A stretch of 64,000 nt of DNA from Octopus bimaculoides (taxonomy: Eukaryota): assembly GCF_001194135.2 (NCBI RefSeq), contig NC_068984.1, positions 128,263,482 to 128,327,481 of the forward strand, given 5' to 3'. Shown here one piece after another: positions 1,629-54,125 of the stretch (within the stretch, counting starts at the first letter, position 1; the number at the start of each line of letters is the position of its first letter). The translations under genes were made by a program, and so were the position numbers. The notes under the pieces are model-generated. The model searched no databases. It was not told the DNA's origin and saw nothing but the letters and a program-made list of their open reading frames with translations.

Positions 1629-1784
1629 CTTTATCTTATCCAAAAGTTTTAAATTTTCATCATTTGATTTTGTTAAACGTGTTTGTAAAGTAGCTTTTTC
1701 ATTCTGCACTGTTTTAACTTGTTCATCGAGAGCAAGCAGTCTTTCTTCAGAGGCTGATGAAGTCTCATCCTTGCTTTCAGACTT
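1629..1784 (-). CDS. USO1: USO1 exon 21 (156 nt; acceptor could instead be at 1802 or 1781, all in frame), coiled coil
   Basis: cattgcag|KSESKDETSSASEERLLALDEQVKTVQNEKATLQTRLTKSNDENLKLLDKIK|gtgaga; phase 0-0. Confidence 0.85.
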
Positions 1785-4700
1785 CTGCAATGACATTTGG
1801 AACTGGAGGTGGAGCCAATGCAGGCAGCAACATACAGACATGGCACATTGACAAAATGAAGGTTTTGAAGAGAGACAAGCAATAAATGTTTCCTAACCAT
1901 ACCATACGTACTGAGCAGAAGGAGAAGGGTAATAGAGGAGGATTTGTGAAAGTGAAGACAATAGCAACATTTATAGATACATGCATTCTGGAGCATTTTT
2001 TGTCAGACATGCAGACTGAAGAATGAATTACAAACAATTGTCTAGAATATTCAATCAAATCATAGATTCTGTCAAGATTCTGATTCTAAAAAATAATTTC
2101 AGCTACATTTGTTTTTTGTATTTTGTTATACTTGAGTTGTACAGATTTGTAAATATTTGAAATCATATATGTGTGTGTGTGTAGAGAGAGAGAGATAGAG
2201 AGAGAGAGATAGAGAGAGAGAGATAGAGAGAGAGAGATAGAGAGAGAGAGTGTGTGTGTGTGTGTTTGTGTTCAGACAATATATTCTTCAATCATCAATC
2301 ATTGTCATGAAGTGGATCTGACTTCTCTTATTAAGTTTGGTGGGCAGAAAGAAACTGAAGTAAAAAACAAGTTAAAGTCTATTCCAAGTAAACCATATTT
2401 ATATTTAATAGTGACCAAATCAAATACCAATAATGTTTCTCTTTTAACTCTAACAAACTGTCAAGGTAGTTAGGATATTTTCGTTTTTGTGAAATATTCC
2501 TACCATGGTTTTAAGGATGTTTGCATCTTAAGAATCTAAGTGTGTGCATGCACAAACATACATACACAATGCACAGAAACAATAAAACTGATAATAGTTA
2601 GAATCAAATGTCACCATCATAATATCACTGTAGAGCAAGTGGTGTCCTTTATTTCTTTTATTCTGTGAAAACATGCCTCGTCACAGGGAAATATCATCTT
2701 ACTCTGAAATAGGTGAGGGTTGGCTGCAGGAAAGGCATTCAGCCGTAGAAAATCTACCTTGATGAATTCCATCCACTCCATGCAAGCAGGGAAAAGTGGA
2801 CTATAAAAATGATGCTGATGTGTGAGTGTATGTTGGCAATATCAACATGGTTCTGTGGCATATGTAATAAAATTTATGACATTTAATCTTATTTAGACAA
2901 TTACTACTATTATATATTATATAATATAAAAGGAATGACATTCACAAACTTCCAAACAACAACAATCATAATGTAACATTATCACAAGGAAAGTAGAACA
3001 ACAGAAAGATATGACATCACAACATATAAGAAGATATTAACATGAGCAAACCAACTTACCTCTAACATTTTCTCAAGCTGTTCCTTTTGTGAAAGTGTTG
3101 TTTTTATTTGTTCATCTTTCGCTGCAACCGTGTGCCGAAGTTCACTGAGTTCAGTAGATAACTGTTGGATACTAGCATGTAGTCGGGCTGTTTCCGTTGG
3201 ACAGTTTTCTTTATTTTCTTCACTAGTTAACTCATTAAGATTTACACAAGCAGCTTTTGCCGCGATCAATTCAGCTAACTGAAAATCAAAGTTTTCAGAT
3301 TATTCAAAATTACAGACAAATGAAACGTTCTTTTTCTCCACTATCACTTTGACTGATGCTGTTAGACAACATGTACACATCACTCCAAATAGTTTTTAAA
3401 ACTAAGAAGCCCCTAAAATTTAAAACAATTAAATTTTAGCAATGGCCATTACTTAGAAAAGTACTTATATAGATCATTTAGCAGTACCCATGTCAGCATG
3501 GAACATAAGATGTTACATGATGATATGCATGATGATAAATGGTTAGAATATTGAATATAAAATGGTTACTAACTTCAATCAAAAGACTAACGATTATTAA
3601 TACAAAAATTAATTAGATTTTCAGAAACAAAATTAATTTTTCCCCATTTTATATCCATTTTTCTTTATAAGCATGAATGGGATGGCTTTTGTAATTTTCA
3701 AAAATTTGAATATAGTTGATTTAACTCTTTTTTTTACAATTAAATAGCCTTGCTATCACAAACTGTAGGTTCAGTTGAGAAGACTGAAGCACACAAAGCA
3801 ATGTAACTTGCTTAGAGGTACAATAATGGTTATAGCAACATTTGAACTCGTGACCGTGTTGTTTAGTATCCTGACCTCACAGCTATTGTACCTCATCAGC
3901 TGATACTATCATATATATATCAGTAAAAACTATAATTCATCAAATATATGGAAAAAAATGCTAAAGAGATTGTATTACATTACTATGGAGTAATACCAAT
4001 ATATACAACAACTCATGAAGCTTATCATTACCAGAAGTCAGTAATATCACAGAGTTAAACCAGTGTACTGAAGCACAAAATGGGGTTATACTATCACATC
4101 AAATTTCATTATGATGTTAAACTATCATATTACACTTTATACCATCATATCAGGTTACTCTCAAACTGTAAGCTTAGACTATTACACTATGTACAAGGTT
4201 GGACTACAACACAATGTATGAGGTTAGACTGCCACACTATATATAAGATTATACTACTATTCTATGTATAAGGTTAGACTATCATAATATGTATGAAGTT
4301 AGACTACCACCCTATGTATAAGGTTAGACTATGTATAAGGTTAGACTGCCATCCCAAAATATTACAATAAAAATGAAAGTTTACTTACAGTTTGTTTCAG
4401 TTCATCATCTTTGGTTTTTAGCTTTGTTTGTAATGTTTCAATTTCTTGTTTTAATTGGGCTATTTCATTCTTACCATCTTGACTTCCTATCAAACATGTT
4501 AAATGCAATGAGAAACGAGAATACAAGGAAGAAGGTGGTGGTAGTGGTGGTGGTGGTGATGAACGTAATGTGCAGGTAAATATCACATCTTAAATCTATG
4601 AAACACCCCCACCTTCTTCCTTGTAAATTATTTCTTATTTCTTTATTGCTCACAAGGGGCTAAACATAGAGGGGATAAACAAGGACAAACAAAAGGATTA

Positions 4701-7700
4701 AGTCAATCACATCAACCCCAGTGTGTAACTGGTACTTAATTTATCGACCCTGAAAGGATGAAAGGCAAAGTCGACCTCAGCGGAATTTGAACTCAGAACG
4801 TAATGGCAGACGAAATACCGCTAAGCATTTCGCCTGGCGTGCTAACGATTCTGCCAGCTCGCCGCCTTGTAAATTATTTCTGGTGACAGATGACAGTTCT
4901 GTTGCTAATATTGGTGGGATGTAAGGCATCAAGTTGGCAGAATTGTTAGAACACCAGGCGCAATGCTTAGCAGCATTTTGTCCATCTTTGTGTTCTGTGT
5001 TCAAATTTTATCAAGGTCGACTTGGCTTGTCATCCTTTCAAGGGTCAATAAAATAAGTACCAACTGTTACTGACCTACCCATTCCCCCAAAATTGCTGGC
5101 TGGGATGTAGAAAAGAATATCAGATCCTACACACCTATAAACATTTGTCAATAAGTTGAGACTGCAGTTGCTGGTATAAGAAAAAGGTGAACATAAGACA
5201 AACATGTTGTGTCATCTGCAATACAGACACTAACCAATGATCATACACCATATATATTTCCAGATGTATACACATATAACATGGCTATGGACAGGAATCT
5301 TTGGCATCCATGAATGAAGCTGCAACTCGCATAAGCACTAAGTAGGCAATGAGGAGTGAGCAGATTATCCTAACACAATGGCACTTAATGAGATAGAGTT
5401 GAGTAAAAGGAAGTGCAAAAAGAATAAACTTATACTCTTTCTCTACTCTCTCTCTCTCTTTTACTTGTTTCAGTCATTTGACTGTGGCTATGCTGGAGCA
5501 CCGCCTTTAGTCGAGCAAATCAACCCCAGGACTTATTCTTTGGAAGCCTAGTATTTATTCTATCGGTCTCTTTTGCCGAACCGCTAAGTTACAGGGACAT
5601 AAACACACCAGCATCGGTTGTCAAGCGATGTTGGGGGGGACAAACACAGACACACAAACATATACACACACACATATATATATATACATATATATATGAT
5701 GGGCTTCTTTCAGTTTCCATCTACCAAATCCACTCACAAGGCTTTGGTCAGCTCGAGGCTATAGTAGAAGACACTTGCCCAAGGTGCCACGCAGTGGGAC
5801 TGAACCCGGAACCATGTGGTTGGTAAGCAAGCTACTTACCACACAGCCACTCCTGCGCCTATGTGAAAGTGGTTTGGGCATTTATTCTAGTAAAACAGTT
5901 GTTCAACGCAGACCAAACTTCAATAGAGCAGAAAGGTTCCAACCATGACCATCACATCTTTATTTTAGACATAGTTATGACTCAGATTACATTATTTAAT
6001 GTTCCTTCTATATTTTTAAGACAGCAGGGTATGCTTTGAGGGAGATTTGGCTATTTTTCCTGCAGAATGAGTACTATATTGAGGCTACCTGTTGGTTTGC
6101 ATATTTACAGCTGTTCTCCTTGTTGGCATTATGCAGTAGCCAAGTAGTTAAAGAGTCCGTTATGGTACAGAAATCATGGATATATGGTCTACCACCAAAA
6201 GTAAAGTTAGACACAAGAAATTCCTCTGGTTTTTCTAGTTTCTTAGATAAGATTTATATCTTCGTAATTTTTTTGCTCAGTTGCAATCCTTCTCTCAGAT
6301 ACACTCTTATGACATTTAGTAGATCTTAGGCCACCATAACTATATTAGTCTTTCTTCAACAAGGCTCACATTTCATGCATTCTAGATGTGTGCTTGTATG
6401 TGTTTACTATAAGGCCAGTTTTACTAAGATAGTGGTAAATATAGTATAGTAGTATAATGCATATTATACAGTAAGGTCAGTGTTGATAACACAGAAGTTA
6501 GAACTGTATAATTTATGGTATATTATAATGTCACTGCTAGGAGTGGTGATAGTATATTCAACACTCTCAGTCTGTCCTACAATGTGTAACCCCGTCTCTC
6601 AGTTTTACAATGTGTGTCCCTTTTCTTAGCCCCACAATGTGCACCTTCATCTCCCAGACATACACTGGGTGACCCAACACAACACAATATCACATAATAG
6701 GTGCAGGCATGGTCTTTGCTTCCAAACCTTGTGGCTTGGCTTTAGCCCCACTGCATGATACTTTGGTAAAATGTCTTCTACTTTGGCTCTGGGCTGACTA
6801 AAGCTTTCTGAGTGGGTTATGTAGATGGAAACTGAAAGAAGTCTTGTGTGTATGTGTGCATGTGTGTTACTGTCTTCTTGCCTTGACATTATGTAATAGT
6901 CGTAAACGAGTATCACTGTCATGCAGGCTGTGTCCCCCATTTCCAATCTTCTATGAAAACATGTCTGGTCACAAGGAATATATTACTCTACTGGGAAACA
7001 GGTGAGGGTTGATGACAGGAAGAGCATCTGAATGTAGAAAATCTGCTTCAGTAAATTCTCTTAGACCCATAAGGGCGAGGAAAAATAGATGCTAAGTTGA
7101 TGATGATAATCAGGATGATGATGATGATGGTGATATGTTATATATATTTAATTGATAATGAAAGAACTGAATGTTTACTTTATAAAATTGCAAGATAATG
7201 TTGTAATACAAACCTTTCTGAGCTTTCAAAACAGCATTCTGGTCTTTCAACTGCTGGATTTGTTGCTTTGTTTCTTCAAATTCTTCTTTATTTAAATTAC
7301 TTTGAGACTTATATCCTTTCAATTCTTTCCTTAAATCATTCAATTGTATATCCTGAAAGATATAAAACATTGTAATTATTTTTTTACAAATATAAAATAT
7401 TTAACAGAACAAAATATTTACAATTTACATATAGAAAATCCCAACAGTTAAAAAGTATTCAAAGTGCAGTCCTTATAACAGTTAATAATGTACCCTAGCA
7501 GCAAGTACTTGACATTATCCAATTTCATATAAAACAAACAAACTACACTAATGAATAAAAATATTTTTTTCTTTCTACATTGAATTTGATTTTTTCTTTT
7601 ATTTATTAGAGAATGGTTTTTGTAATTTTTGAGTCTTTTTTTTTTTCCAAATAAAATGGCACTTTGAAAGATTTAATACAGTATGTCCAGAACCAAATTA

Positions 7701-10700
7701 AGACCAGCTTTAGGTGTTAACAAAACTTTAATCTTGAAAGGGCAGCTTTAATTAAAAAAAATATTAATGTAGGTGCAGACATGGCTGTGTGGTTAAGAAG
7801 TTTGCTTTCCAACTATCTGTTTTCAAGTTCAAACCCAATGTATTGCACCTTGGGCAAGCATTTTCTACTGTCTCACCAGGCCGACTAAAGCCTTGTGTGT
7901 GGATCTGGTAGATAGAAACTGATAAAAGCCTGTTGTATATGTATATGCATGAATGTATGTTTGTGTGGATGTATGTGCGTCTGTATCTTGATATTGCACA
8001 GTAATTGTAAATGAGTATCACTGTCATACAAGCAGTGTCATTCACTTCCAATATTCTGCAAAAACATTTCTGTCTATGGGGAAATATTGCCCCTAGTTTG
8101 GACACAAGTGACAGTCGGCAACAGGAAGGGCATTAGGCAATAGAAAATGTTCCTCAATAAACTCTGTCTAAACCATGATGCAGGCATCAAAATGTGGGCA
8201 TTAAAACAATGATGATGATAGAATTACTATTAAGTAGGCTGCTTCCTACTTAATCTTATTGCGGATAATAGTTATATATTAGTTGAATAAGAACACATTA
8301 CTCACTTGCTCTCTAATCAATTCTTTGTATTGAATCACAATACTACTGTGTTCATGTATACTAGCAGAGAGACCAGTCTTCCCTTTGTTGTCAGACACAG
8401 ATACTGCTCTTAAAACTTCATCTGAAATAGAAGACAATACCAGTAAAACAATGAAGATTTTTATCAATCTCACAAGACAGAATTAACCCTTAAGCTGTGA
8501 TTTATATATTTTCCCTACATTTACTTCTCAATAAAATATTATAATTGCAGAAATAAAGATATATATATCAAGCACCAACTTTACAGACACTGATGGTCCA
8601 GAATCTCTTATAATCTAAACTAATCTATAGGTACCTGTATTTCATTTAATTATTTTAATTAATTAATATGTTTAATTTAGAGTGTGTTGACCAAGGTGAC
8701 CATTCCTGGTTAGGAAAAATCACTAATCTGGAAAGGCTTTGAAATGAAAGGTTCTGGAAAATCAATGTTGTCAACCATAAAAATAAATGGTACAAAGTAT
8801 TGATGAAGACATGAAAACCTTTCTATGATGGATGATTATAATGGCAATAAATCCATTCCTGATATATGATATATACTGGATCATGGATTCATTATACTTT
8901 GTAACACAGCTTAGATAAAATGTTTTCTAGAAAATGCTTTGAACATTTAAGGAGGTGCTTCCATTTTATGGATACATCAACAAATCCCCACAAAACAACC
9001 ATGGACATGATAAATTTGTTTTTCTGAGATATATATTGGAATAATTTTTGAAGGAGTTTGTAACCCACAAATGGAAGTTTCTGTTGGTTGAACAATAATT
9101 ACTTATAAATACAATTTTGAATTTAAACAATATATTCCATACAAAAACCCATCACAAAGAAGTATCACATCTTATGGTTTTTACTTCTTTGTTTTTCCCA
9201 GTAGAGATTTGAAAATCATTTTACTTCATTATGTGAATCAGTATAAACTAAAACTTATGAATTTAATGGAACCTGTATATTATTTAGGTATATTATCACA
9301 AACTTATTGTGATATGGTAAAGCTAAGATTAATGAAATATAATTATAAATGAGTTTGTCATTGTAAATCTAAAGAACTTACTTTCCAACGATTTGAATAG
9401 ACGGGTGAACTCATAGTCAAAGATCACTTCATTTGGATGTTTGTAATTAAGGTGAGCTTTCTTTGCTGCTTTTGTGTAACTTTCATGCTTTGTCACCTGA
9501 GATAGTTTATCAATAAATGTTTCCATCCCAATACGGTTAGCAATGATTTTGCACAAAGAATCCCTGTAATAGAAAACACACACACATTACTATATCAACT
9601 GACAATACTACCAGTAATACAGCTTATGGTTACCCTTCTTTCTGTTTCTGTTTGCTAAGATCTTCTGAAGATGATATATTTAATATTTTCAATATTGATA
9701 GACTATGATGACAATGTGGTAGTGGTGATCAAGCAAAATTTGAATATTTCTTTTCAAAGGTCATTAATTCAATACATGAAAGTAAGTTCATTATCACTTC
9801 TATATCTGGATTCTAAATAAAAAAGATCCTACTAATTTCCAATATAGTTTATGAAGAGAGACCAAAAGTTGGTAAAGGTTAACAAAAAGTAAGAGGAAGG
9901 CGGTGACCTGGAAGAAACGTTAGTATGCCAGGTAAAATGCTTAGCGGTATTTCGCCTGCCTTTACGTTCCGAGTTCAAATTCCACCGAGGTTGACTTTGT
10001 CTTTCATCCTTTCAGGTTCAATAAATTAAGTACCAGTTACACACTAGGGTCGATGTAATTGACTTAACCCCTTTATCTGTCCTTGTTTGTCCCCTCTATG
10101 TTTAGCCCCTTGTGGGCAATAAAGAAATAAGAAAGTCAGAGGAAGGGATTTACAAACCACAGAAATATAAAGAAAGATACTTATTAAACTTAAATATTTA
10201 TGGTGTTTAATACATCCTACACATGACAATGCTTGATTTCAGCAAGAACATCTATTGATAAAACTGTGTCTAAAATTATGATACTGAACTCTGTAATATA
10301 TCGATGGTTGCTAACTGTGTATCATCATTTCACCATCAAGGGACCAATGGTAGCATACTATTAGTTCCACTAGTATGCACTTTTCATACATTCTTAGTGC
10401 CCTGGGCAAGCCATTATACAGCATCTAGTGGTGAAGCTCCAGCTTGGGAATTCAGGAGAAGTTTTAGGGAGTATTCTAACCAAGTATTCTAGGTCTATTC
10501 TAACCAAGGGGGGTAGTCGAGGACCCTAGTTTTGGGTCAAATAGCAGATGATGGTCTAGTGTCTAAAACATACATGGTCTGGAAGGGAGCTGGCCTCTAG
10601 ACATGTGATGCATGTTAGTATATGAACACAGATACACAAGTGATACTGTCCCCCCAGTATCACTTGATAACTGATGTTGGTGTGTTTACGTCCCTGTAAC

Positions 10701-13700
10701 TTAGCGGTTCGGCAAGAGAGTTCGATAAAATAAGTACTAGGCTTACAAAGAATAAATCCTGGGGTCGATTTGTGTGACCAAAGGCGGTGCTCCAGGATGG
10801 CCACAGTCAAATGACTGAAACAAATAGAAGAATAAAGGAATATATTTAAATATACATCAAGTTACATACTTGTTAAAAGTTTCGTTTTGGTCATCATTGA
10901 AAAGTACACTGATCCCCAAAAGAAAAGCACAGAGGCCTTGGACAAGTTGTTCTAGTTCTTCTCCTTCAGATGCTGAAATCTGAGCAATCAGCTTAAATAG
11001 CAGTTAAGGTGAATTATAAAATACATTTATGATGAAGTGAATTTAGATGCCTATGGTTGTAGTCAGATTTGAACTTGTGGTCATGTAGTCAGCTGTCTAG
11101 TATCTTAACCTAACACAAACACATACATGCATACAGACAAGCACATGCTGTGAGAATTGTTTTGTTTTAAAACTCCAGTTAATAAAATACAAGATTATCA
11201 CAATTTCAAGTCTCAATAAATATCTGGTAAACATTACACATAAAATGTGATGTTACTTAGACAAAAATAATTAATAATTAACTTCAAATGTGTAGTAGCA
11301 TATAATTCTTTGCCTCATTAAATTAGGAGACAATATATATCTCTATACATGTTACAACTGATATTATATGCAAATTTTGTATTGTTTGTAAAGTATGAGC
11401 ACATCCAAGTAATTGCTCAAATTTCTTCAATCAAAAATTTTGATCTCAGCTTGAAAACCTTGTGTGCACAAATTTTTTTACTTTTGTGCATTAGTTGTAA
11501 AATGAGTGCATGCATACAAGTGCACAGCTTAGAGGAAAAACTAATTATATGGCGTATAGTGTAGTATCATTTGCAAAAATGTTTGCAAGGCACCAGCAGG
11601 CCTCAAGTGACACATTCATGTCCATAGAAAATAATTAACACTTTATTTTACTGAACCCTCTTTTGTTGTCCACGATAAGAGAATCCATTATATATATATA
11701 TATATATATATACATCATCATTTAATGTCTATTGTCCATACTGGCATGGGTTGGACGGTTTGACCAGGGCTGGTAAGCTGGAAGCCTGCACCAGACTCCA
11801 GTCTGATTTGGCATGGTTTCTGTGGTTGGATGCTCTTCCTAATGCCAACCACTCCGAGAGTGTAATGCCTGCTTTTACATGCCACTGGCACAGGTGCCAT
11901 TTGTGTGATACCAGTATCTGCTATGATTGCAATTCTACTTGGCTTGATGGGTCTTCTCAAGCACAACATAATGCCAAAGGTCGCGGTCATTGCCTTCATG
12001 AGGCTCAACACTCAAAAGGAGCTCAGCCACTTTGCCTCTGTGAGGCCCAATGCTCAAAAGGTGCTTTTAACGTGCCAGTTACATGACATCAGCATCAGCC
12101 ATGACTATGACTTCACTTAGCTTGACAGGTCTTCTCAAGCACAGTATATCACCAAAGGTCTCAGTCACTTGTCATCACCTCTGTGAGGCCCAAAGTTTGA
12201 AGATCATGCTTCACCAACTTGTCCTACGTCTTCTTGGGTCTACCTCTAGCATAGATTCCCTCCACAGAGATTGGCACTTCTTTACACAGTTGTCTTCATC
12301 CATACACATCACATGACCATACCAATGCAGTCATCTCTCTTGCACACCACATCTGATGCCTCTTATGCCCAACTTTTCTCCCAAGATGCTTACACTCTGT
12401 CGAACATGCACACTGACATTGCACATCCAGCAAAGCATACTGGCTTTATTTCTTTCAAGCCTATGCATGTCCTTGGCTGTCACAGCCCATGTTTCCCTGC
12501 CATAAAGCCACAGGCATCATACAATCTTTCTTTCACTCTGAGAGAGAGGCCCTTTGTTGCCAGCAGAGGCAGGAGCTCTCTGAACTTTGCCCAGCCTAAT
12601 CTTATTCTCACAGCTACGCTCTTTGAGCATCAACCTCCACTACTAACTTGGTCACCTAGATAACAGAAGCTATCTACTACCTCTAGCTCAAGGTCATCAG
12701 TATAGAGGAGCTCCCAGGGGCAGCCTGTCTTAAATTCCTCTGTTATTGGCTGGAGGACTATGACGAACGAGAGAGAACTGAGGACCAATCCTTGGTGAGA
12801 CCTTACTTGTACCCTGAATTCTTCGCTGTACTCGCTGCCAACCCTCACCTTACTGGTAGCATCCCTGTACATGGCTTGTACAGCTCTCACCGACCACTCG
12901 TCTATCCCTAATTTCCACATTAACCACCAGATAAGGGATTGTGGGGACCCTGTCAAAGGCTTTATCCAAGTCAACAAAAGCCAAATACAGAGATTTATCT
13001 TTAGCTATGTATTTCTCCTGCAGCTTCCTTACTAGAAATATAGCATCGGTGGTACTTCTCCTTGGCACAAAACCAAGCTGCATCTCATCTAGACTAACTC
13101 TCACCCTAATTAGTTTGACTATGACTCTCTTCATAAGTTTCATCAACTGATCCAACAATTTGATACCTCTGTAATTTCACACACACACACATTAAAACAA
13201 AGACTGTATGTATGCATGATACTTTTACATACATTTGGTCTAAGTAACTTGGAATTATCAGGGTATATTCAATTAGTTGATGCAAGTTTCATAAAAGGAT
13301 ACATAAGGCACATTAGCTGTATTGCAAAGAAAATGAGTAACAGCAATAGAACAGTCAGATAACCAGCCACACAGTAACATTAAAAGTCCAATGCGTGTCT
13401 GAATTTTTCCACCCTGAAAATACACAAATTTAACAATGATATTTTAACAATGTAGACAGTTTGATAATAATAATTATGCATTAAACATATATTCATTTAC
13501 ATTGCCAAGTCATTATATATAATGTTATGAACAGTCTCAATCTTTCACCATGTCTTTCTGTTAATCATTTCCCAAATGTGAAATATCAGAAAGGAATCCT
13601 TTGGTGTTAGTAGTTTTGATTTTCGTTTCAGTTCATCACTTTTATCACACTTGTTACAACAGACACTGTTGTCACTAGTAGAGATATACTGTCACTACAG

Positions 13701-13973
13701 AGTCAGAATGCCGTCATCACTGATACAGTACACTGTCATTGAAAACACTATCATTGTTTGAAATGGATATCATAACAATATCTTTTATATCAAACATAAA
13801 AGACAAAATACTTTTCTGTTTATATGGATCAGAAGAAATTTGTGAAGGCAGATTTTCTACAGCCAGATACCTTTCCTGTTGCTAACCCACACCTGTCTCC
13901 AAGTAAGATAATAGTTACCCATGACCAGACATGATTTAACAGAAGACTGGAAAGGAAGAACTCTGGTTACATG

Positions 13974-14010
<37 letters not shown>

Positions 14011-17000
14011 GTATATGTATANNNNNNNNNNNNNNNNNNNNNNNNNNNNNNNNNNNNNNNNNNNNNNNNNNNNNNNNNNNNNNNNNNNNNNNNNNNNNNN
14101 NNNNNNNNNNNNNNNNNNNNNNNNNNNATATATATATATATATATCATCATCATCATCATCGTTTAACGTCCGCTTTCCATGCTAGCATGGGTTGGACGA
14201 TTTGACTGAGGACTGGTGAAACCGGATGGCAACACCATATATATAATTTCATTCAGCTTCTGTCAATCAAATCCACTCACAAGGCATTGGTCAGCCCAAG
14301 AGCTATAGTTCTACGAAGTGGGACTGAACCTGAAACCATGTGGTTGAGAAACAAACTTCTTACAGTGCAGCCATGCCTGTGCCTACATAAATATTTCTGA
14401 TTTATTTTTTCATTGAAAATCGATAGTTCTTGATTTCTCTTGGAACCATAAGTTCTTGTGAGTTGAAACACTGGTCTCAATCATCAAAAATGTACAATAA
14501 TTAGGATGTGTAATTGATAAAATACAATGCATCCCTCCTCCTTGTCATTATTGTCATCCTCATCCTCCATTTCCTAAACAGTAGTCTTTATTATGCAAGA
14601 GAAATTTTGCACTCAGCACTGATCAATCTGTTATGGCTATTGATGCCTATTCATAGCAAGATCAGCAGCTTCATTAAATCTACATCTGACAAGATCATTA
14701 TTAACTTGTAAAAAGTATGTCTTTCACAGAGATCCTCTAAAAATGATAATGCTCTGTTATTTGCTTTTTGTGATTCAAAAGTGTGGCCAGTGGTATATTT
14801 GTGGCCAGTGGTACATTTGTGGCCAGTGGTATATTTGCCAGCATCAGAGAACAAATTCCTTACAACTTTTAATTCAATGTCTGAGTCAAAGTTTATCATT
14901 CAAATAACAATTATGTTTCTTGAATAAAATTTAGGTAGTTAACCAAATTACATTGCATGTTTATATAAATATCTTCAATACAACGTAGAAATGAGAGAAA
15001 AGTTTTCAAATTTTGTTCAACTTACTTGTGCCAACATGTTACAGCATTGTTGTAACAAAGATACTGGTGGATTACCAAGACTTGTAGCCAACTGTACTCT
15101 AAGTAATTGTTCTCGTTGTGTATTGTTCTCTAAAATGGCATGCAGGAGAGCAACTGAAGCAAACCAGTTTGATAATGAGTCGCCACTGAACAAGCCACCA
15201 CACAGAAGCTGTCCAGCTGTGATGGTATTCACTGAAATAAACAGAAAATGAAAGTGATTAAGAATCTGGCCACAAACACATTGAATATCAATAGTTATAC
15301 AGTTGTCATGTCAGTTGGGTAAAGGTATTAGTTGCGATATTCTGTAGTAATTACACACCACTATACAGAAATCATATAGTTTACTGGACCCATCAACCAG
15401 TTTAGAATATAATACAAACTATTTACAAGATGTTGACTTAATATGAAATAAACTTCCTCTCCATTTTAACGTACTCAAACACACCATAAATTACTTTTCT
15501 TCCATACATTGTCTTTTTATAGTTTAACAATAAAGAATAAATTATCTTGTAATTTACAGATACACAAGAGCAAACACTCCTGTTACTTTCATCTGTCAAA
15601 CTACTTTTATCTGACAAACTAAAAGGGTAAGTTGTAGAGCTATATTTGAAGTAGAACACAGTGTTATTTTATAACACATGCATTCTCACTTTAATAAAAG
15701 AGATTTCTAGAAATAATATACTATCCCAAACTGCAGAGATATGGTATAGTTAAAAAGGAAGATACATTGTAACTCTCATTTAGAAGTTGTTTGAATAATA
15801 TAACACTGTGAAGCAGTCATATAATGTAACATCTTTTAGTAGACATATGTAATTGTTATATAAACAAATATTGATCTGTTATAACATGGCAATGAAGATA
15901 ACTATCAAGACTTGTAGACAGTCTCTGTATTGTTTACATATTGAAGGATCGAATAGCAAATTACATGATAAAAGTAAAGGTTGAACAAAATATAACTAAA
16001 AATCTGAAATATAGTGGTGCAATTGGGGTACAGTGTCTGAATTGTAGGATGGAGGTATTAGTGTGGGATAATAACATAATACACTAATAATACACTACAG
16101 TTTTAGTGAAGGGGGAAAACAACAAGAATAAATAAAAGGCTATAAAATTGGGAGAATGGAAGTCTTTCTTTACAAAACATAAAGAAATAAAAAGGATAAA
16201 GTAGGAAATAAAATTATAAAACAAGTGGTCAGTAAACATGACTGAGAGATGCGGATGTTGGTGCCAAAAGGTCATCGGGTGGAAACATGGAGACAAAATT
16301 CAACATATGAATGTAAAATACCGTGATTGCTTCTCTCACCATCAGCAGTTGTGGGTAGAAGTGTTTGCACAATCTGAGATTGGCCAACTTCATTCTTGAA
16401 TAAGAAAGACTGGAAGCAGTAGAGAACAGCACATCGTAGGACAAAAGGTTGTTTTTCATTCACCATAGACATCAACAGAACCACAATGGCAGGTCTATAA
16501 TAGTATAGAAAATAAAAAACATTTTATGTATTAACTCTAATTTAGATATCTAAAATATAATAATAAACTTGGTAAGTTTCAATAAGTGCTCATTTACAAA
16601 TTACAACAGAATTCAATACGACAGGCAAAACAAAGTTAAAGAGTAGAATTTTCCACTACTGGACCGAAACAGTAAAAATTACATAGATCAATGGCAATTG
16701 AAAACACAGTAGTCAGATATAAAATCAAATGTTCAATAAAAGCAATGAAAGTTACCTAGGTGGTTTTGATGGTGCCATCACAGATGCAAAAAACTCTTGG
16801 TTGGCTAAGTTTCCTCGAATTATTTCAGACACAGTATTAATGGTCTGGAAAAAATAAATGTTATTTTAGTATCATAACAAATAAAAAAATTTATAGTGTA
16901 TCTAATTTATAAACTCATGAATATATTTAAATATTCACATTACAACATTTGAAGTAGTCTAAAATTATAGTACAGGGTGTCCACAAAGTTTGGGTACATA

Positions 17001-18435
17001 GGGATTAATACATACTTTAAGAAATTATTATGTTATGATTTTATTTACTCCATGTACCCAGACTTTGTAGACACCCTGTAGACTATAAAGAAATAAAATG
17101 GATGCTAATATGAGGATATAAACAGTTGCAAACAACTGTAATTAAAAGAGAAAATTCCTACTATTGCTTTGGAATTTAGTTTCTCAAATAGTCACAGAAT
17201 CAAATAAATATTTAGTTAAACACAGTTGAAAATGTTACAATTAGTAAAATAATTAACCACACTTTCAGTGAATAAATAAAGTAAGGATGGTATTAAGGAT
17301 ATTTTAGACCATACCGCTGTTAGGACATCTGCCGGAACACCACTGGCCATTAGTATAGTACATAACTGCTTCAACAAATCTGAAATCACAGAAACAAATA
17401 TGTAAAATAAGGAAAACAGTATCTACAACAAGAAATTATATGCATGTTTGTGTGCATGTGTGTATTCATGTATGTACATATGTATATACACAAACATGTA
17501 TGTATGTATGTATATATGTATGTATGCATGCATATAAGAATTATTATGTCAATTCCAAATATTTCAATAAAGTTCTCATATATCCTTATAACAATCATAA
17601 GATAGCAGGAGTATTTCTACCCATACATCCACATATGCTAACATTGAATTTTAATATAGTTTCTATATTTTAAATTAGGATCCACACTGATATTCAATAT
17701 CCCACCCATCTGGCATATCTAATGTCCATGCAACCTTATAAATACAGTAAATCCCTCTTTCTACCCAATAGTTGTAAACAACCTAAGTCAAACCTCAGAG
17801 TAGACTGTCTATTTTTGATATAATATATGTATAAAACATTACAAATGCTAGGTCTCTCAATTTCTGATGATCTCTCAGTCACCTACCATATATAATAGTG
17901 GCAAAACTGCACCTAAAAGTCTATTACATTGATCTCAATGTTCAACTGGTATTTCTTTTATTGACCCTGAAAGGGTGAAAGATAAAGCTGACCTTGGTGG
18001 AATTTGAACTCAGAATGTAAAGACAGATGAAACACTGCTAAGCATTTTGCCCAGCTTACTAACGATAAAAGAAAATAACAATAATAAGTTAACTTACTGC
18101 AGGAGTTCATAACTTTCTGACAAGCTGCTGTTTGATTGAGTGGGTTGTTAGGAGAGACGAGGGTTCGGACTAGCTATAGAACAGGAAAGAATGGACATAT
18201 TAGCATGCACAAGTACCATTATTATAAAGACACCAGTGAATTGACAAAATGGATTCAAAATAGTTTAGCGAATTGGGAGAGAGAGTGCATTTTGATCAAA
18301 GCAAACTGCTGTTTGGACAAAAGGAGTAATATATATTAGATAAGGTGACAGAGACAAATTGAGATAATCTTGGTTAATATATGGTTTAACCAAGTAATGC
18401 TAATCTGATGTTCCCAGTCTCAAGGTCAGAATAAC

Positions 18436-18474
<39 letters not shown>

Positions 18475-19369
18475 ACTATGCCAAATCAGATTGGAGTCTG
18501 GTGCAGCTCCCCAGCTGGCCAGTTCTGGTCAAACTGTCCAACCCATGCCAGCATAGACAACACACGTTAAATGATGGTGGTGATGATGATGATACACATA
18601 CATATCTCCTCATATATAACAATAACATTCTACTTTTGAACTGTTATGCCAGTATTTGAATTTTAAATGAGTGTATATACATATATACAAACATATAGGT
18701 CTTATCTAAATATGCATAAACATACATAGCTTCTATACTGAAGGACTGAGACAACACTTTTGTGATTGTAATATATACATGTGACAACTCTAAATGGTTG
18801 ACTTGAGGTAGGCTTTATATTTGCTTTCACAGCTCATTGCATGCAATCTTGTGATTTCCTCATTTTTATTTTTACCTGTTGGATCTGGAAGAAGAGGCAA
18901 TAATCATGGCCTTTGCTGGCCCTGCTATATTGTTGAGATTAATACCTTTAATACTTCTCTTGACACTTTGTAAGTCAACACCAGCATGAGAAAAGAAGGA
19001 ATCCCAGAAGGACAGTGTTCTCAGAAGGAAAGATTGGGTTTAGTGTTTAATGCAGATCCTGAGTTGGGGTGGAGACAACAAGAGTAATGACTGGAAGAGA
19101 GATGAGTGGCATGGAAATGCTTGAGTGGAGGTGTTATGAGCTTAATTAGCTCTGAGAAGTAGAGGCGATTATAGCAGCAATAGAAATAGCTGAGAAAGAG
19201 ATTATAGTGGATTATACTGATGATGCAGTTCATACAATTTATATTCTCAGACATTCTCTAAACAATACCAACCCACTCAACATCATCAGAGGCAATGAAA
19301 CTGGAGAGTGGTGCCAAAATCAGCCACTTCAAGTCAAAAGCTGACAATGGGGGCACTCTGCAGCATAAG

Positions 19370-19425
<56 letters not shown>

Positions 19426-20033
19426 NNNNNNNNNNNNNNNNNNNNNNNNNNNNNNNNNNNNNNNNNNNNNNNNNNNNNNNNNNNNNNNNNNNNNNNNNNN
19501 NNNNNNNNNNNNNNNNNNNNNNNNNNNNNNNNNNNNNNNNNNNNNNNNNNNNNNNNNNNNNNNNNNNNNNNNNNNNNNNNNNNNNNNNNNNNNNNNNNNN
19601 NNNNNNNNNNNNNNNNNNNNNNNNNNNNNNNNNNNNNNNNNNNNNNNNNNNNNNNNNNNNNNNNNNNNNNNNNNNNNNNNNNNNNNNNNNNNNNNNNNNN
19701 NNNNNNNNNNNNNNNNNNNNNNNNNNNNNNNNNNNNNNNNNNNNNNNNNNNNNNNNNNNNNNNNNNNNNNNNNNNNNNNNNTATATATATATATATATAA
19801 TCATCATCATCATCATTTAATGTCTGCTTTCCATGCTAGCATATCTGGATGGTTGTACATTTACAGATTTTTATTAATCTGGAGAATCTACAAGAATAGA
19901 TGCAAGCGCTAATTTATAAAAACATGTGACATATTAATAAAAATCTGTAAATGTACAACCATCCAGATATCTGAGTACCTTATTACCTTATTATTTTTTC
20001 TAATATATAATTCCTGTACATCACCTCCAAACC

Positions 20034-20080
<47 letters not shown>

Positions 20081-21427
20081 TTATATGTTGTGGTTTAATC
20101 CTTGGTTAGCTCTGATCCAACAGATCTATGATCAACAGCATTTCACATGTGGCTCTCTCTGATCTTTTTTCAGGTATAATATATCTGAGAATAGGTTGTT
20201 ATATGTTGTCTTTCTCTTTTAATATGATATGGTGTGATGAGGGAGATTTGGGTGCTATTTCTAGCAAGTCAAATGACCATGTAGTAAACAATGTTCTTTA
20301 CTTATCATAGACTATTTTACTGTATGATGCGTAGGTAAAAGGTAGTCATTAATGGAGGAGACTGAAAAAGATGTATGAAGAAGTAGTGAAGTTATACTGA
20401 GATGATTGTCGGTATACTGTATAGCAAACATTTCCAACCCACTGCAGTAAGGAAAAACAGATGCTGGTAATGACATGAGAAAAGAAAAATAAATGTTAAA
20501 AAAATAAAAGTACAATTTAATTTATTATTTACAACAAGCATGTGTATTTACTGTTTCCAAATTCAGGTAAAAAAAAAAAAAAATCAGTCAACAAGAACAT
20601 ACAGAGAAACAACAATAATTCTCTATCAATACTATACTTAGCACTGTAGCCATTAGCTATATGCTCTATCACCTTAAATGATGCTTTAAAGCTAAGTCCA
20701 TTATAAGAGTTAACTCCAAACACTAGCCTTTATTTGTTTGCTGTGGAAATGTTGGTTGTAGAAACTGTAACAAATGAAGTTAGATTTTATTAGTATTTTG
20801 TTGCATCACAGGAAGTTCATTATGCCAATAAACACCTGCATAAGTTCTATTTCACTTCTTTATTTAACCAATTAACTAATTGATTGTTTAATTAATTGCT
20901 CAGGCAATCAATCAATTCGCTAGGTTTGTTAAAATCCTTTTGTTGCTATTCATGACCTTATCAATGACATGCCCTCCCTACTCCGGGTCTGCCTGTCTCC
21001 TTGATGGTGATGAATGATGATGAAAACACTCTGACAGACTTAGCTGACTGAGTGATCAAACAATTAATCAAACAATCAATTAGTTAATTAGTTAACCAAC
21101 TGATAAATAAATAAATAATAAAGAAGTTAAAGAGAACCAGTGTATGTGTTTATTATTGGCATAATGACTATCTCAAGATACAGCAAAATATGTTTGAACA
21201 CATGAGTTTACATCAAGAATCTTACAAACCATTTACAAAAATGAAATATCATTATTAGTATTTTTAATTGTATGGCACATTTCTTTAAATAAGAGAGAAA
21301 GAGAGAGAGAAAGAGAGGTGGGTGTAACAGAATTTACCTAGTTCAAGACTGACACAACAGAAACATAATCAAATGATATACTGAATCTTATTGAACATGA
21401 AAATTTGAACAATAAAAAACTATTAGA

Positions 21428-21472
<45 letters not shown>

Positions 21473-21738
21473 TGATAGAAAAGGTAAGACAACAAAAGAA
21501 AGAAAGAGACCTCGACATTATGTAAATTGAGAAATTTATCTGTAAATAATATGTGACAATTATTTGGTAGCCATGATAAAACTCCGAGTTTCAGATGTCG
21601 GGGCGGAAACCCACGCCGCCATCTCTTCAGGTATCTGGGCATCGAAAAGTGCTATGAAAATGACCGTTAAACAAAGGGAAATTACTGTGTGATTGACCAT
21701 TATTAAGACAAAAGAGCTATTAGAATGACCACTAACTT

Positions 21739-21771
<33 letters not shown>

Positions 21772-22073
21772 ATATACAAAGTATGAGGGTTTAGCTTACA
21801 GGTGATCTAAATGATTAGGTATGCTAGGTTAGTGTTGTAACGGATTACTAGGGCTCCAAAGTTATAGCCGAGACGGTAGTTACGGAGCCATTGTAGATTT
21901 CCGATGCAGCAGATATATAATTGTTAAAGGGGACAACAAACGTAAGGCAAGGTAAACATCTCAAGTCATATATATTATTATTACTGGAAAAAATTTTTTT
22001 TTACCAATAATAATGTATATGACTTGAGATGTTTGCTTTGCTTTAATGCTTGTTGTCCTCTTTAAGAAATGTA

Positions 22074-22126
<53 letters not shown>

Positions 22127-22276
22127 TCTCTGAGTGGTTGGCGTTAGGAAGGGCATCCAGCTGTAGAAACTCTGCCAAATTTAGATTGGAGCCTGGTGTT
22201 GCCATCCAGTTTCACCAGTCCTCAGTCAAGTCGTCCAACCCATGCTAGCATGGAAAGCAGACGTTAAATGATGATG

Positions 22277-22347
<71 letters not shown>

Positions 22348-25300
22348 CAAAAAGATTTAAAACCAAGTGGAGATAATGGAAACAAAAGATAATAAAATTA
22401 TGTTTGGAGGCAAGTAACAAAACACAACAGACACAATGTTCAGATGATAGTAGAAAAGAGACAAAAATGAGAAAACTGAGATAAATTCACTCTAAAATAC
22501 ATCAACAAAGATTCTATTGAAACTTACACTATAATACTGGTGTCCCTTTAGATAATACACTGAATCTGTTGGCATACATGTTCAGAGTATAATAAGACCT
22601 GTTACTGAAGAACCCTACGTCAGTCCTGATAGAGCTGACTTATCATTACAGATGTTCCAACCCCATTTTTGTATACCTCCAGAACAACACTATCTAATGC
22701 ATTCTTCTTTTTTAAAGACGACAGAGAATTTGGCTACAATTTTTAGCAGATCAAGTGATTATAAAATTTTCCCTCATTAGTTTCACAATTAAGACATTAT
22801 GATACAGGAGACTGAAAAGATGACTATTTCTCCTCTGAATTCTCTCGCACCATCTCCAACACTTCCGTCACCTTTCTCGACATTTCAGTCAACATACACC
22901 ACTTCACTCTCACCACGTCCATACACTACAAACACACCGACTCACACTCATGCCTCAACTTCTCCTCCTTCCACCCTACCCACACCAAACTCTCCATCCC
23001 CTACTTCTAATTCCTCCATCTGCACAGGCTCTGCAGTGACAACCATGACCTTGAAACTCAGCCTCAACTTATGGCTCATCACTTCATCCTTCATGGATAT
23101 TCCCTCACCACTATCCACACTGCCCTTGTCAGAGTACGTTCTGTAGACTGTGTCTCTGCAATCTCCCTCTGCACCCATGTTAAACAGGGTGATGGGTTAA
23201 GCCTAGTATCTAAGTAGGCCATGGAGGGATTTGAACTTGGAATGCAAAAACTGGAACAAATATCACAAAGCATCCAGTGGACCATCCTTACAGTTCCACC
23301 AATCTACTGCCTGCGATTAGTACGTTGTTATCAACACTGAAAGAATGGAAGGCAAAATTGACCTCTGTCACAATACTGCAAGATCAGATTCATTTCTGTG
23401 TTCCATACTTAATATTAAGAAAAGGTGGTGCGTTGGACAAAATGCAATATAGCATTGCTTCTGGATCTTTATGTTCTGAGTTCAAGGTGGTGAGCTGGCA
23501 GAATAATTAGCATGTCAGATAAAATGTCTAGCAACATTTCTTCTAGCTCTTTACATTTTGGGTTTAAATTCTGCTGAGGTCAACCCTGCATATCTGGGTC
23601 AACAAAATTAATACCAATCAAATATTGAGACCCATGTAATCAACTTTCCCTTCCCCATCAAAATTGTTGGCATGGCGCTAAAAATTAGAAAGAATATGAA
23701 ACATTAACTGATTAAGAGATTGAAGTTGTCTCCCCTGGTTTTTTTTTTTAATTACTCAAATTAGTCATCTAGATAATTAATATTTTTCATCACTAAGGGT
23801 CTAATTTTAATGAAATTCTGAGTTTACTACATCAAATACATAAATACATCAGAACCCACGTTACTATTAAGTATTCATGTAAGAGGTACCCTGTGTAATT
23901 TTCCCTGCATGTGTATTAATGATCCAGGTTGCATCTTTTTATGTCAAAGAGGCTGGATCGTTGGCTACAAAACTAGCACCACCATTAAGCTTAACTTCAG
24001 AGAAGGGTAGCTAGAAACTCAGCAGAACTAATAACAAGACCTGTCAAAAGGACAGATGAACCTTGAGTCGGTTCAATGATTATCTAGCAACAGCACAAAT
24101 ATATATCACCATCATCAGCAACATCCATTTTCCATGCTGGCATGGGTTGGACAGCTTGACAGGAGCTGGTAAGGCCAAGGGATGCACCAGGTTCCATAGT
24201 CCATTTTGGCTTGGTTTCTACAGCTGGATGCCCTTCCAAATGCCAACCACTTTACAGAGTGTATTGGGTGCTTTTTACATGGCACCAACCTTGTCCTTTT
24301 TTCCATGGTGGCATGGGCTAAATGGTTTAACAAGAACAGACAAGCCAGAGGGCTTAGCCAGGTTCTATGATATTGCATGATTGGCCTTCATTGGAATTTT
24401 AATTATAGCTAAGGCAATACTTATTTTAAGGTTTCTAGTTTAAGGAGGTTGTGTTGCATAGAATCACACACACACACACACACACAAATAGCTCAATTCT
24501 AGTTTGTTTTGCATGAAAAAATAAAGGTAATAGTCTTCTAATAATTGGCATAACTATAACAAATGATTACAATATCATGAAAAAGCAATCAGAAAAATTT
24601 AGAAATTACATGTCATAACTTTAGAACTAAGAAATGTTTTCCACCATTCTATTTGTAATTGCTACAACTTGATTGACACAACTGCAGTGAAGTCATTGAC
24701 AGTTATCTCTATCCACACAAACCATAATGATATCTGTTAGGCAGCTGACGATGGGAATATATATTTGTTTTATTTGTCTGTGAATCTTTTATATCTTGAG
24801 GTCTGTTGTTGTATATTGTCTTTCATTATTGTCGGTTTATGGTAGTTTTGTTGTTTGTATTATAAAATACGTTGATTTTGCATGACTCTCCTTCATTAGG
24901 ATTCTAATTATGGCTAGGGCAATACTTATTTTAGGGTTTCTAAATCTTCATAATTTGCAGATGTCTACAACAAAAAATACTCCATTCCTTGTATTATGAG
25001 GAAATTTTGATTTTGAAATATTACTCTGATATTTGTCACAATTGTGATAGTTATTTCAATCCCAGAAACTAAGATCGAGTGATAAACATTGCAATAACAG
25101 TGTTTTGATTATGCATATATAGAATAAAAAAATACTGGTGCTTAACAAGAAGGTAATAAATTAGAGAGCAAAAAGCAAGTGAAGCACAAATGGTTGTGGT
25201 GAGAGAGAGAGAAGAAGAAGAAGAGGGCAGACATAGAAAGAATACAAAGAGAATAAAGTGTAAAACAACTAAGTAGCAAAGAAATAAAGAGAGTGAAGAA

Positions 25301-25930: not shown

Positions 25931-25961
<31 letters not shown>

Positions 25962-26268
25962 TATAGCAACAATAATTTGGAAATGTGGAAGTTCAGTTTC
26001 AAAGAATAGACAAATAATGACTAACTATTGAGAGAAGTCGCTAAAGAGAAGAGAATGGTAGATAGAAAGATAAAGGAAAAGCAAAGATAGAGATAGAAAT
26101 GATAAAGGTTAATGAAGGTTTTTTTTATGGTATTTTTACTTAATTGGATAACGTTTTAGATGAACAATAATATAGCATGCTTTATGACATTTAATTTTAT
26201 TCAGCAACACATTCTAACTGATCTCATACACCAGATATATATATATATATATATATATNNNNNNNNNN

Positions 26269-26310
<42 letters not shown>

Positions 26311-27687: not shown

Positions 27688-27723
<36 letters not shown>

Positions 27724-39828: not shown

Positions 39829-39872
<44 letters not shown>

Positions 39873-51608: not shown

Positions 51609-51653
<45 letters not shown>

Positions 51654-51890: not shown

Positions 51891-51925
<35 letters not shown>

Positions 51926-54091: not shown

Positions 54092-54125
<34 letters not shown>

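What the first reader, a model, noticed from the sequence alone, without database searches (positions are those of the whole stretch)
10992..13302. USO1 intron 14 is a U12-type minor-spliceosome intron
Seen: donor GTATCCTTTT and a CACCTTAAC branch site about 12 nt before the AG, with no polypyrimidine tract. The other 20 donors are ordinary U2 types (GTAAGT, GTGAGT and similar). Known: this is the U11/U12 consensus; minor introns are rare, slowly spliced and can limit expression. Seen: reading into the intron gives VSFYETCIN* after codon 527. Inference: USO1, and so ER-Golgi tethering, depends on minor splicing here, and retention gives NMD or a protein lacking all the coiled coil.
Basis: partly seen in the sequence, partly recalled or inferred. 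Interest (0 to 1): 0.75.

Follow-up and report, generated by a model that had tools for sequence, protein, structure and literature searches.

The report
USO1 minor (U12-type) intron, conserved
Intron 14 of the Golgi-tethering gene USO1 in this window is a textbook minor-spliceosome (U12-type) intron, but it is the ortholog of one already catalogued in human and mouse, so it is a correct, ordinary annotation.

Summary
On the minus strand, the intron at 13302→10992 starts with GTATCCTTTT. It has a TTCACCTTAACT branch site whose branch A lies 12 nt from the AG. It separates two phase-0 exons that align without a gap across the junction to bovine p115.

A scoring matrix built from 77 human minor introns gives 14.5 bits for the donor and 12.2 bits for the branch site, both inside the range of real minor introns. 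The other 20 introns of the gene score at most 1.3 and 5.0 bits. The branch site is the best-scoring 12-mer in the whole window on either strand.

The same intron, at the same codon boundary, is U12-type in a cnidarian (Clytia), an annelid (Ridgeia), a fish-like contig and two unnamed animal contigs. The Minor Intron Database (MIDB) tables already list it for human USO1 and mouse Uso1. It is absent from Capsaspora and from one arthropod-like contig. A chytrid fungus has a U2-type intron at the same position.

The functional inferences (dependence on minor splicing, a stop codon on retention) follow logically but were not tested here.

Verdict: real, correctly interpreted, already known. Low interest.

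The parts
10992..13302 (-). USO1 intron 14: 2311 nt, phase 0, GT-AG subtype of U12-type intron
   Evidence: Sequence. Junction chosen by homology. Scores.
13294..13302 (-). U12-type 5' splice site GTATCCTTT (with exon context TAT|GTATCCTTT)
   Evidence: 14.5 bits on a matrix built from 44 human GT-subtype minor introns (training range 7.0-18.3, median 15.6). Top 3 of 7,260 GT sites in the window. U2-like leave-one-out score is -3.0 bits.
11002..11013 (-). Branch-point sequence TTCACCTTAACT. The branch A is at 11004, 12 nt from the last intron base.
   Evidence: 12.2 bits (training median 11.7). Best 12-mer of 127,976 in the window on both strands.
10992..10993 (-). 3' splice site AG
   Evidence: The homology-scored junction ranks first, and the alignment across it is gapless.
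13303..13413 (-). USO1 exon 14 (GGKIQTRIGLLMLLCGWLSDCSIAVTHFLCNTANVPY), ending at codon 521
10870..10991 (-). USO1 exon 15 (LIAQISASEGEELEQLVQGLCAFLLGISVLFNDDQNETFN...)
13273..13275 (-). In-frame TAA reached if the intron is retained (VSFYETCIN*)
10980..10981 (-). Second in-frame AG (the CAG of the conserved Gln codon), 12 nt downstream. It is a possible minor alternative acceptor that would remove LIAQ.
   Evidence: Second-ranked junction. The Ridgeia gene model uses the equivalent site.
12630..13158 (-). Degraded non-LTR retrotransposon reverse-transcriptase fragment inside the intron. It accounts for part of the intron's length and its higher G+C (0.40).
   Evidence: ORFs. Pfam RVT_1 at E 1.5e-7, 31.8 bits, above the cutoff. 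G+C.
1629..55470 (-). The part of the USO1/p115 gene held in the window: ATG at 55470, 21 exons and 21 donors. The last exon or exons (acidic tail) lie beyond the window start.
   Evidence: tblastn-based model. Pfam Uso1_p115_head and Arm_vescicular. Match to PDB 3gq2_A at E 2e-284.

Best explanation
Window 10992-13302 (minus strand) is a GT-AG U12-type intron of the USO1/p115 gene. It is orthologous to the minor intron already catalogued in human USO1 and mouse Uso1.

Mechanism, from established knowledge of the minor spliceosome and not tested here:
- The U11/U12 di-snRNP recognises the intron as a unit. U11, and later U6atac, pairs with the donor ATCCTT. U12 pairs with CCTTAAC and bulges the branch A.
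- The 3' splice site is chosen by its short distance from the branch point (12 nt here), not through a polypyrimidine tract.

The intron sits in phase 0 after codon 521, inside the head domain. Every full-length USO1 mRNA in this animal must therefore pass through minor splicing. An unspliced transcript stops after nine extra codons. That would give a product without the end of the head and without the whole coiled-coil tail, or a transcript open to nuclear decay or NMD.

Shown here: the signals, the junction, the contrast with the other 20 introns, and the conservation across animal phyla.
Inferred: the actual use of the minor spliceosome and the fate of retained transcripts.
For: **The signals**
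- Donor GTATCCTTTT and branch site TTCACCTTAACT lie 12 nt from the AG.
- Scores are 14.5 and 12.2 bits on matrices built from 77 human MIDB introns. The other 20 introns score at most 1.3 and 5.0 bits.
- The U2-like donor score is -3.0 bits, against 2.9 to 12.4 for the others.
- The branch site is the best 12-mer in the window.

**The junction**
- It is confirmed by gapless alignment to p115.

**Orthologous introns at the same codon boundary carry U12 signals**

| Source | Donor | Branch site | Branch A to 3' end | Intron length |
|---|---|---|---|---|
| L001 | GTATCCTTGA | TGTCCTTAAC | 11 nt | 513 nt |
| L002 | GTATCCTTTA | TATCCTTAAC | 11 nt | 156 nt |
| Ridgeia piscesae | GTATCCTTTG | TTCCTTGAC | 12 nt | 590 nt |
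| Clytia hemisphaerica | GTATCCTTTT | TCCTTTAC | 25 nt | 516 nt |
| Fish-like L008 | GTATCCTTGA | GCCTTGAC | 17 nt | 102 nt |

- Intron lengths range from 102 to 2311 nt, so only the signals are conserved.
- 44 read-through ORFs from other genomes continue VP[YF]|VS then F or L in 38 cases (that is, GTA TCC TTN), S in 5 and I in 1.

**Prior record**
- MIDB tables (PMC6717393, Tables S1-S2) list human USO1 (TTTGTATCCTTT / GCCTCCTTAACA, 618 nt) and mouse Uso1 (TTCGTATCCTTT / AATTCCTTAACA, 352 nt) as minor-intron genes.
Against: - No transcript data for this organism could be consulted, so use of the junction rests on protein homology.
- The window holds no minor-spliceosome snRNA gene (Rfam found nothing). 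Presence of the machinery in this genome is therefore inferred only from the preserved signals.
- The branch site has A where the consensus has T (ACCTTAAC against TCCTTAAC). The same variant occurs in catalogued minor introns, such as mouse Ubl5 TTTACCTTAACT.
- The pyrimidine fraction upstream of the AG is not clearly lower than in the other introns.
Confidence: 0.93

Rival explanations
1. The intron is removed by the major (U2-type) spliceosome, and the U12-like motifs are a coincidence or a relic.
For: The termini are GT-AG, which both spliceosomes accept. RTATCCTT occurs by chance at nine other places in the window. A chytrid fungus has a U2-type intron at the same position, which shows that this position can be served by the major spliceosome.
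Against: The donor matches only 4 of 9 positions of CAG|GTAAGT. It scores -3.0 bits on the gene's own U2-type donors, the worst of the 21. There is no pyrimidine run longer than 4 nt before the AG. Donor positions +3 to +8 and the branch-site box are held constant from a cnidarian to mammals while the rest of the intron changes completely, which is not expected of a U2-type intron. Human and mouse orthologs are catalogued as minor introns.
Confidence: 0.03
2. The intron is U12-type, but the acceptor used is the second AG at 10981-10980, 12 nt downstream (24 nt from the branch A). That would give a protein lacking LIAQ, either as the main form or as a minor isoform.
For: The downstream CAG is in frame and ranks second in the junction scan. 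The deposited Ridgeia gene model uses the equivalent site. A distance of 25 nt seems to be tolerated in Clytia.
Against: The first AG gives a gapless alignment of LIAQ to LTGQ in bovine and human p115. It also lies at the 11-13 nt distance seen in four of the other orthologs. The downstream CAG is simply the conserved Gln codon. The Ridgeia model is probably an annotation error.
Confidence: 0.05
3. The locus is a non-functional copy (pseudogene), so the intron type has no consequence.
For: None was found. The 3' end of the gene lies outside the window, so the complete reading frame cannot be checked.
Against: Seventeen exons give an uninterrupted 661-aa product that aligns end to end with bovine p115 residues 1-651 with three small gaps. 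All 20 complete introns have GT-AG termini, the 21st shows only its GT donor, and exons 18-21 stay open.
Confidence: 0.02

Closest known systems
Human USO1 and mouse Uso1 minor intron (MIDB; Olthof et al. 2019, PMC6717393, Tables S1-S2)
   Same: The gene is the same. The position is the same: phase 0, after the aromatic residue of ...NVP[F/Y], residue 521 of p115. The GT-AG subtype is the same. The donor GTATCCTTT is identical, and the branch-site core CCTTAAC is the same.
   Different: The host species differs: an AT-rich invertebrate-like genome. The exon ends in Tyr (TAT) instead of Phe. The intron is 2311 nt, against 618 nt in human and 352 nt in mouse, partly because it carries a retrotransposon fragment. 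The branch-site box starts with A instead of T.
Orthologous USO1 introns in Clytia hemisphaerica (cnidarian), Ridgeia piscesae (annelid) and three unnamed contigs (L001, L002, L008)
   Same: They share the same codon boundary, the GTATCCTT donor, a TCCTTRAC-like branch site and a short distance from branch point to AG.
   Different: Lengths range from 102 to 590 nt, and there is no sequence similarity outside the signals. In Clytia the best branch site (TCCTTTAC) lies 25 nt from the AG and scores lower, at 9.2 bits.
U2-type intron at the same position in the chytrid Geranomyces michiganensis USO1
   Same: The boundary is exactly the same (…NIQF|LVEQ…, phase 0).
   Different: It is 62 nt long and reads GTAAGT…pyrimidine-rich…CAG. 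It scores -5.0 and -3.4 bits on the U12 matrices. Either the intron is ancient and changed type, or it was gained independently. The data here cannot tell which.

Membership tests
U12-type (minor) intron, GT-AG subtype | 5' splice site matching /RTATCCTT from the first intron base | tested here: met
   The site reads GTATCCTTT at 13302-13294 and scores 14.5 bits, against a training range of 7.0-18.3.
U12-type (minor) intron, GT-AG subtype | Branch-point sequence matching TCCTTAAC (TTCCTTRAY) | tested here: met
   The sequence ACCTTAAC matches 7 of 8 positions and scores 12.2 bits (training median 11.7). It is the best 12-mer in the window. The same variant occurs in catalogued minor introns.
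U12-type (minor) intron, GT-AG subtype | Short distance from branch point to 3' splice site (about 10-20 nt) | tested here: met
   The branch A at 11004 lies 12 nt from the last intron base at 10992.
U12-type (minor) intron, GT-AG subtype | No polypyrimidine tract before the 3' splice site | tested here: inconclusive
   The longest pyrimidine run in the last 40 nt is 4, the lowest in the gene (tied with intron 7). The pyrimidine fraction of 0.64 lies within the range of the other introns in this AT-rich DNA.
U12-type (minor) intron, GT-AG subtype | Poor fit to the U2-type donor consensus | tested here: met
   The donor scores -3.0 bits on the gene's other donors (which score 2.9 to 12.4) and matches 4 of 9 positions of CAGGTAAGT.
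U12-type (minor) intron, GT-AG subtype | Orthologous intron classed as minor in other species | tested here: met
   MIDB lists it for human and mouse. DNA of Clytia, Ridgeia, L001, L002 and L008 shows the same signals. 44 read-through ORFs point the same way.
U12-type (minor) intron, GT-AG subtype | Excision depends on U11, U12, U4atac and U6atac | not testable with these tools
   This needs knock-down or suppressor-snRNA experiments.
U12-type (minor) intron, GT-AG subtype | The host genome encodes the minor spliceosome | not testable with these tools
   Only 64 kb of the genome is available, and Rfam found no snRNA in it.
USO1 / p115 vesicle-tethering protein | Armadillo-repeat head domain (Pfam Uso1_p115_head, Arm_vescicular) | tested here: met
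   PF04869 at E 1e-65 over residues 346-629, and PF18770 at E 5e-32. Residues 1-650 align to bovine p115 3gq2_A at E 2e-284.
USO1 / p115 vesicle-tethering protein | C-terminal coiled coil followed by an acidic tail | tested here: inconclusive
   Exons 18-21 encode heptad-like, Glu/Lys/Gln-rich sequence with weak matches to the tails of relatives. The conserved KKEQDDLLVLLADQD exon and the acidic tail were not found in the window. The gene runs off its start.

The most novel reading that the evidence does not exclude
There are two untested readings. (a) The intron position predates animals, because a chytrid fungus shares it, there as a U2-type intron. USO1 would then be a traceable case of U12-to-U2 conversion in fungi, alongside precise loss in some arthropod-like lineages and in Capsaspora. 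(b) The strict retention of a slow, minor-spliceosome-dependent step in a core ER-Golgi tether from cnidarians to mammals is used to tune secretory capacity through regulated intron retention. Reading (b) is the more novel one, and the evidence here neither supports nor excludes it. The probability given below is for reading (b).
Probability: 0.1. Interest if true: 0.5.

Novelty: already known. Interest (0 to 1): 0.15.

Why it matters
It matters mainly for annotation. Gene predictors that ignore U12 signals can misplace this junction. The deposited Ridgeia model drops four residues there. Anyone studying minor-spliceosome defects in this organism should expect USO1, and hence ER-to-Golgi tethering, among the affected genes, as in mammals. 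The comparative series assembled here shows that the intron type has been held since before cnidarians and bilaterians split. This fits the general picture of ancient, conserved minor introns and adds no new principle.

Tried and rejected
- **Word-indexed protein search** with the 78-aa junction peptide returned a single hit. That hit nevertheless led to the first orthologous locus. The exhaustive representative search was needed to get reference proteins.
- **Full-text paper searches** for USO1 with 'minor intron' or 'U12-type' found nothing. USO1 with 'minor spliceosome' found two unrelated papers. The record was only in the supplementary tables of PMC6717393.
- **Other supplements** had nothing held or no mention of USO1: PMC7507305, PMC6865273, PMC11347168, PMC7367187 and PMC10639083. 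IAOD and plant orthologs could therefore not be checked.
- **Other RTATCCTT sites** were all rejected.
  - 38305 lies inside coding exon 3.
  - 17302 (ATATCCTT) lies 13 nt inside intron 10. It gives an in-frame AT-AC alternative, but that alternative scores lower on homology (713 against 777), has no branch site (best -1.4 bits), and would insert residues where the GT-AG model aligns to p115 without a gap.
  - 57380 and 47199 lie in intergenic or antisense DNA with no coding signal nearby.
- **Rfam scan** of the whole window found no RNA family.
- **Tandem Repeats Finder** on the intron found nothing.
- **Naming the source organism:** the closest relatives (P0002, L001) come from unnamed sequencing runs. 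From identity levels I can only say it looks like an invertebrate, perhaps a lophotrochozoan. This is inference.

Full report
**What is in the sequence**

The gene lies on the minus strand. Exon 14 (13413-13303) encodes GGKIQTRIGLLMLLCGWLSDCSIAVTHFLCNTANVPY and ends ...GTGCCTTAT. The next bases are GTATCCTTTT.

At the other end, the intron reads ...TTTTATAATTCACCTTAACTGCTATTTAAG. Exon 15 (10991-10870) follows and encodes LIAQISASEGEELEQLVQGLCAFLLGISVLFNDDQNETFN....

The intron is 2311 nt (13302 down to 10992) and phase 0. Reading on from exon 14 into the intron gives VSFYETCIN and then TAA at 13275-13273.

**The junction and the gene**

The joined 78-residue peptide aligns across the junction to bovine and human p115 without a gap there (VPY|LIAQ against VPF|LTGQ; E 1e-28).

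I used full-length relatives found by an exhaustive profile search as tblastn probes. I scored every frame-compatible donor/acceptor pair by homology. This rebuilt the gene: ATG at 55470, 21 exons and 21 donors in the window. The last exon or exons, which carry the conserved KKEQDDLLVLLADQD motif and the acidic tail, lie beyond the window start.

The first 17 exons give a 661-residue product. It carries Pfam Uso1_p115_head (E 1e-65) and Arm_vescicular. It aligns over residues 1-650 to bovine p115 chain 3gq2_A residues 1-651 (E 2e-284) with three small gaps.

The intron follows residue 521 in both proteins. The 36579 site fits bovine p115 without an insertion. By either count this is intron 14.

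**Is it more than chance?**

The octamer RTATCCTT occurs ten times in the window when both strands are counted. The donor motif alone proves little.

I built position weight matrices from the 77 human minor introns printed in part 1 of MIDB Table S2: 44 GT-subtype donors and 77 branch sites. The window's base composition served as background.

| Feature | Intron 14 | Human training set | Other introns of the gene |
|---|---|---|---|
| Donor (bits) | 14.5 | 7.0-18.3, median 15.6 | at most 1.3 (20 donors) |
| Branch site (bits) | 12.2 | median 11.7 | at most 5.0 (best in last 50 nt, 19 introns with acceptor in window) |

- The branch A is 12 nt from the 3' end of the intron.
- The intron 14 branch site is the single best of all 127,976 12-mers in the window.
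- It is the only one among 7,418 AG sites with such a box 8-20 nt upstream.
- The donor is in the top 3 of 7,260 GT sites.
- Both signals coincide with exon edges fixed independently by homology.
- A leave-one-out matrix of the gene's own U2-type donors gives intron 14 -3.0 bits, against 2.9 to 12.4 for the rest.
- The claim of 'no polypyrimidine tract' is only weakly measurable in this 33% G+C DNA. The longest pyrimidine run is 4, tied for lowest in the gene, but the overall pyrimidine fraction is unremarkable.

**Comparative evidence**

Orthologous loci were fetched for six other sources and read at the same codon boundary.

| Source | Donor | Branch site | Branch A to 3' end | Intron length |
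|---|---|---|---|---|
| L001 (unnamed) | GTATCCTTGA | TGTCCTTAAC | 11 nt | 513 nt |
| L002 (unnamed) | GTATCCTTTA | TATCCTTAAC | 11 nt | 156 nt |
| Ridgeia piscesae (annelid) | GTATCCTTTG | TTCCTTGAC | 12 nt | 590 nt |
| Clytia hemisphaerica (cnidarian) | GTATCCTTTT | TCCTTTAC | 25 nt | 516 nt |
| L008 (fish-like) | GTATCCTTGA | GCCTTGAC | 17 nt | 102 nt |

Nothing else in these introns is alike. The signals themselves are therefore under selection.

In addition, 44 open reading frames called on genomic contigs of other animals run from exon 14 into the intron. All of them continue V-S, followed by F or L in 38 cases, S in 5 and I in 1. This is what GTA TCC TTN, TCN or ATN would give.

The intron is absent in three ways elsewhere:
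- An arthropod-like metagenome scaffold (L007) has exons 14 and 15 fused on genomic DNA.
- Capsaspora has no intron at this position.
- The chytrid Geranomyces michiganensis has a 62-nt U2-type intron (GTAAGT...CAG) at exactly the same boundary, NIQF|LVEQ, phase 0.

**What is already known**

The supplementary tables of Olthof et al. 2019 (PMC6717393), which are the MIDB lists, include both human USO1 and mouse Uso1.
- Human USO1: chr4:75799733-75800350, 618 nt; donor TTTGTATCCTTT, branch site GCCTCCTTAACA.
- Mouse Uso1: 352 nt; donor TTCGTATCCTTT, branch site AATTCCTTAACA.
- Both are marked as minor-intron genes in both species.

The exon ends in a Phe codon in both, which is the VPF of p115 residue 521. 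This fits the same position as the window's intron; the position itself was not verified. USO1 is not mentioned in the retention and alternative-splicing tables (S5-S7) of that paper as held in the library. That data set therefore gives no sign that this intron is unusually retained.

**How it most likely works**

From established knowledge of the minor spliceosome, not tested here:
- The U11/U12 di-snRNP binds the donor and branch site cooperatively.
- U6atac replaces U11 at the donor.
- U12 pairs with the CCTTAAC box and bulges the branch adenosine.
- The first AG at the right distance (12 nt) is used.

The intron interrupts the head domain (Pfam head region 346-629). A retained intron therefore gives a product of 521 + 9 residues without the end of the head and without the whole coiled coil. 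Alternatively, it gives a transcript with a premature stop far upstream of the remaining exon junctions, which makes it a candidate for nuclear decay or NMD. These consequences are inferences.

A second in-frame AG lies 12 nt downstream. It is the CAG of a conserved Gln codon and could serve as a minor alternative acceptor. The Ridgeia gene model uses that site and loses four residues. I take that to be an annotation error.

**Rivals**

- **U2-type splicing** is very unlikely, given the donor scores and the cross-phylum conservation of intronic positions.
- **A pseudogene** is unlikely, given the intact frame.

**Verdict**

However, the intron is the ortholog of a catalogued human and mouse minor intron, so the finding is already known in kind and in gene. 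Its value is as a correct annotation and a clean example of deep conservation.

The chytrid U2-type intron at the same site and the losses in some lineages are mildly interesting side observations.

Noticed in passing
window 12630-13158 (minus) and 63657-63998 (plus): Intron 14 contains a degraded non-LTR retrotransposon reverse-transcriptase fragment (Pfam RVT_1, E 1.5e-7). A better-preserved copy of the same family (…FGFVPGKSTTDAIFLVRQLQEKYLAKDKPLYLAFVDMEKAFDRVP…) runs off the end of the window. The insert raises the intron's G+C to 0.40.
   Followed up: partly
window 11751-12086 (plus) and 59244-59612 (minus): A second interspersed repeat family (…LQSDLAWFLWLDALPNANHSES… and …LQSNLAEFLQLDALPNANHSECS…) occurs both in intron 14 and upstream of the gene. 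Inside the intron there is also a 96-nt direct repeat, at 11894-11989 and 12072-12167, 73% alike.
   Followed up: no
window 17295-17302 (minus), 13 nt inside intron 10: An ATATCCTT box lies just after the U2-type donor GTATGG. It gives an in-frame AT-AC alternative on paper. It has no branch site, a lower homology score, and would insert residues, so it was judged a chance match.
   Followed up: yes
window 36579 / 36597 (minus), acceptor of exon 5: There are two in-frame acceptors 18 nt apart. The upstream one has the better pyrimidine tract. The downstream one fits p115 without a six-residue insertion in the acidic loop. This may be a real alternative acceptor, and it explains the 521 against 527 codon count.
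   Followed up: partly
window 14022-14127, 19426-19781, 26259-26268, 51654-51663, 52208-52217, 54307-54810: Assembly gaps (runs of N, 996 bases in all) lie in introns 13, 8 and 1 of USO1. None touches an exon found here or intron 14.
   Followed up: yes
window 1-1628: The gene runs off the window. The donor after exon 21 (GTGAGA at 1628) has no acceptor in the window, and the conserved C-terminal exon (KKEQDDLLVLLADQD plus acidic tail) was not found.
   Followed up: partly
L004 9910-10511 (Ridgeia piscesae, KAK2174660.1): The deposited gene model places the acceptor of the U12-type intron 12 nt too far downstream and so loses LISQ. It also contains odd repeated segments elsewhere. This is an example of annotation trouble at minor introns.
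   Followed up: partly
L006 2169-2230 (Geranomyces michiganensis): A 62-nt U2-type intron sits at exactly the codon boundary of the animal U12-type intron. This suggests either an ancient intron that changed type or a parallel gain.
   Followed up: partly
L007 1379-1612 (metagenome scaffold ERZ19053313, arthropod-like USO1): Exons 14 and 15 are contiguous on genomic DNA, so the U12-type intron was lost precisely. The next intron, after ...FTK, is present and U2-type.
   Followed up: partly
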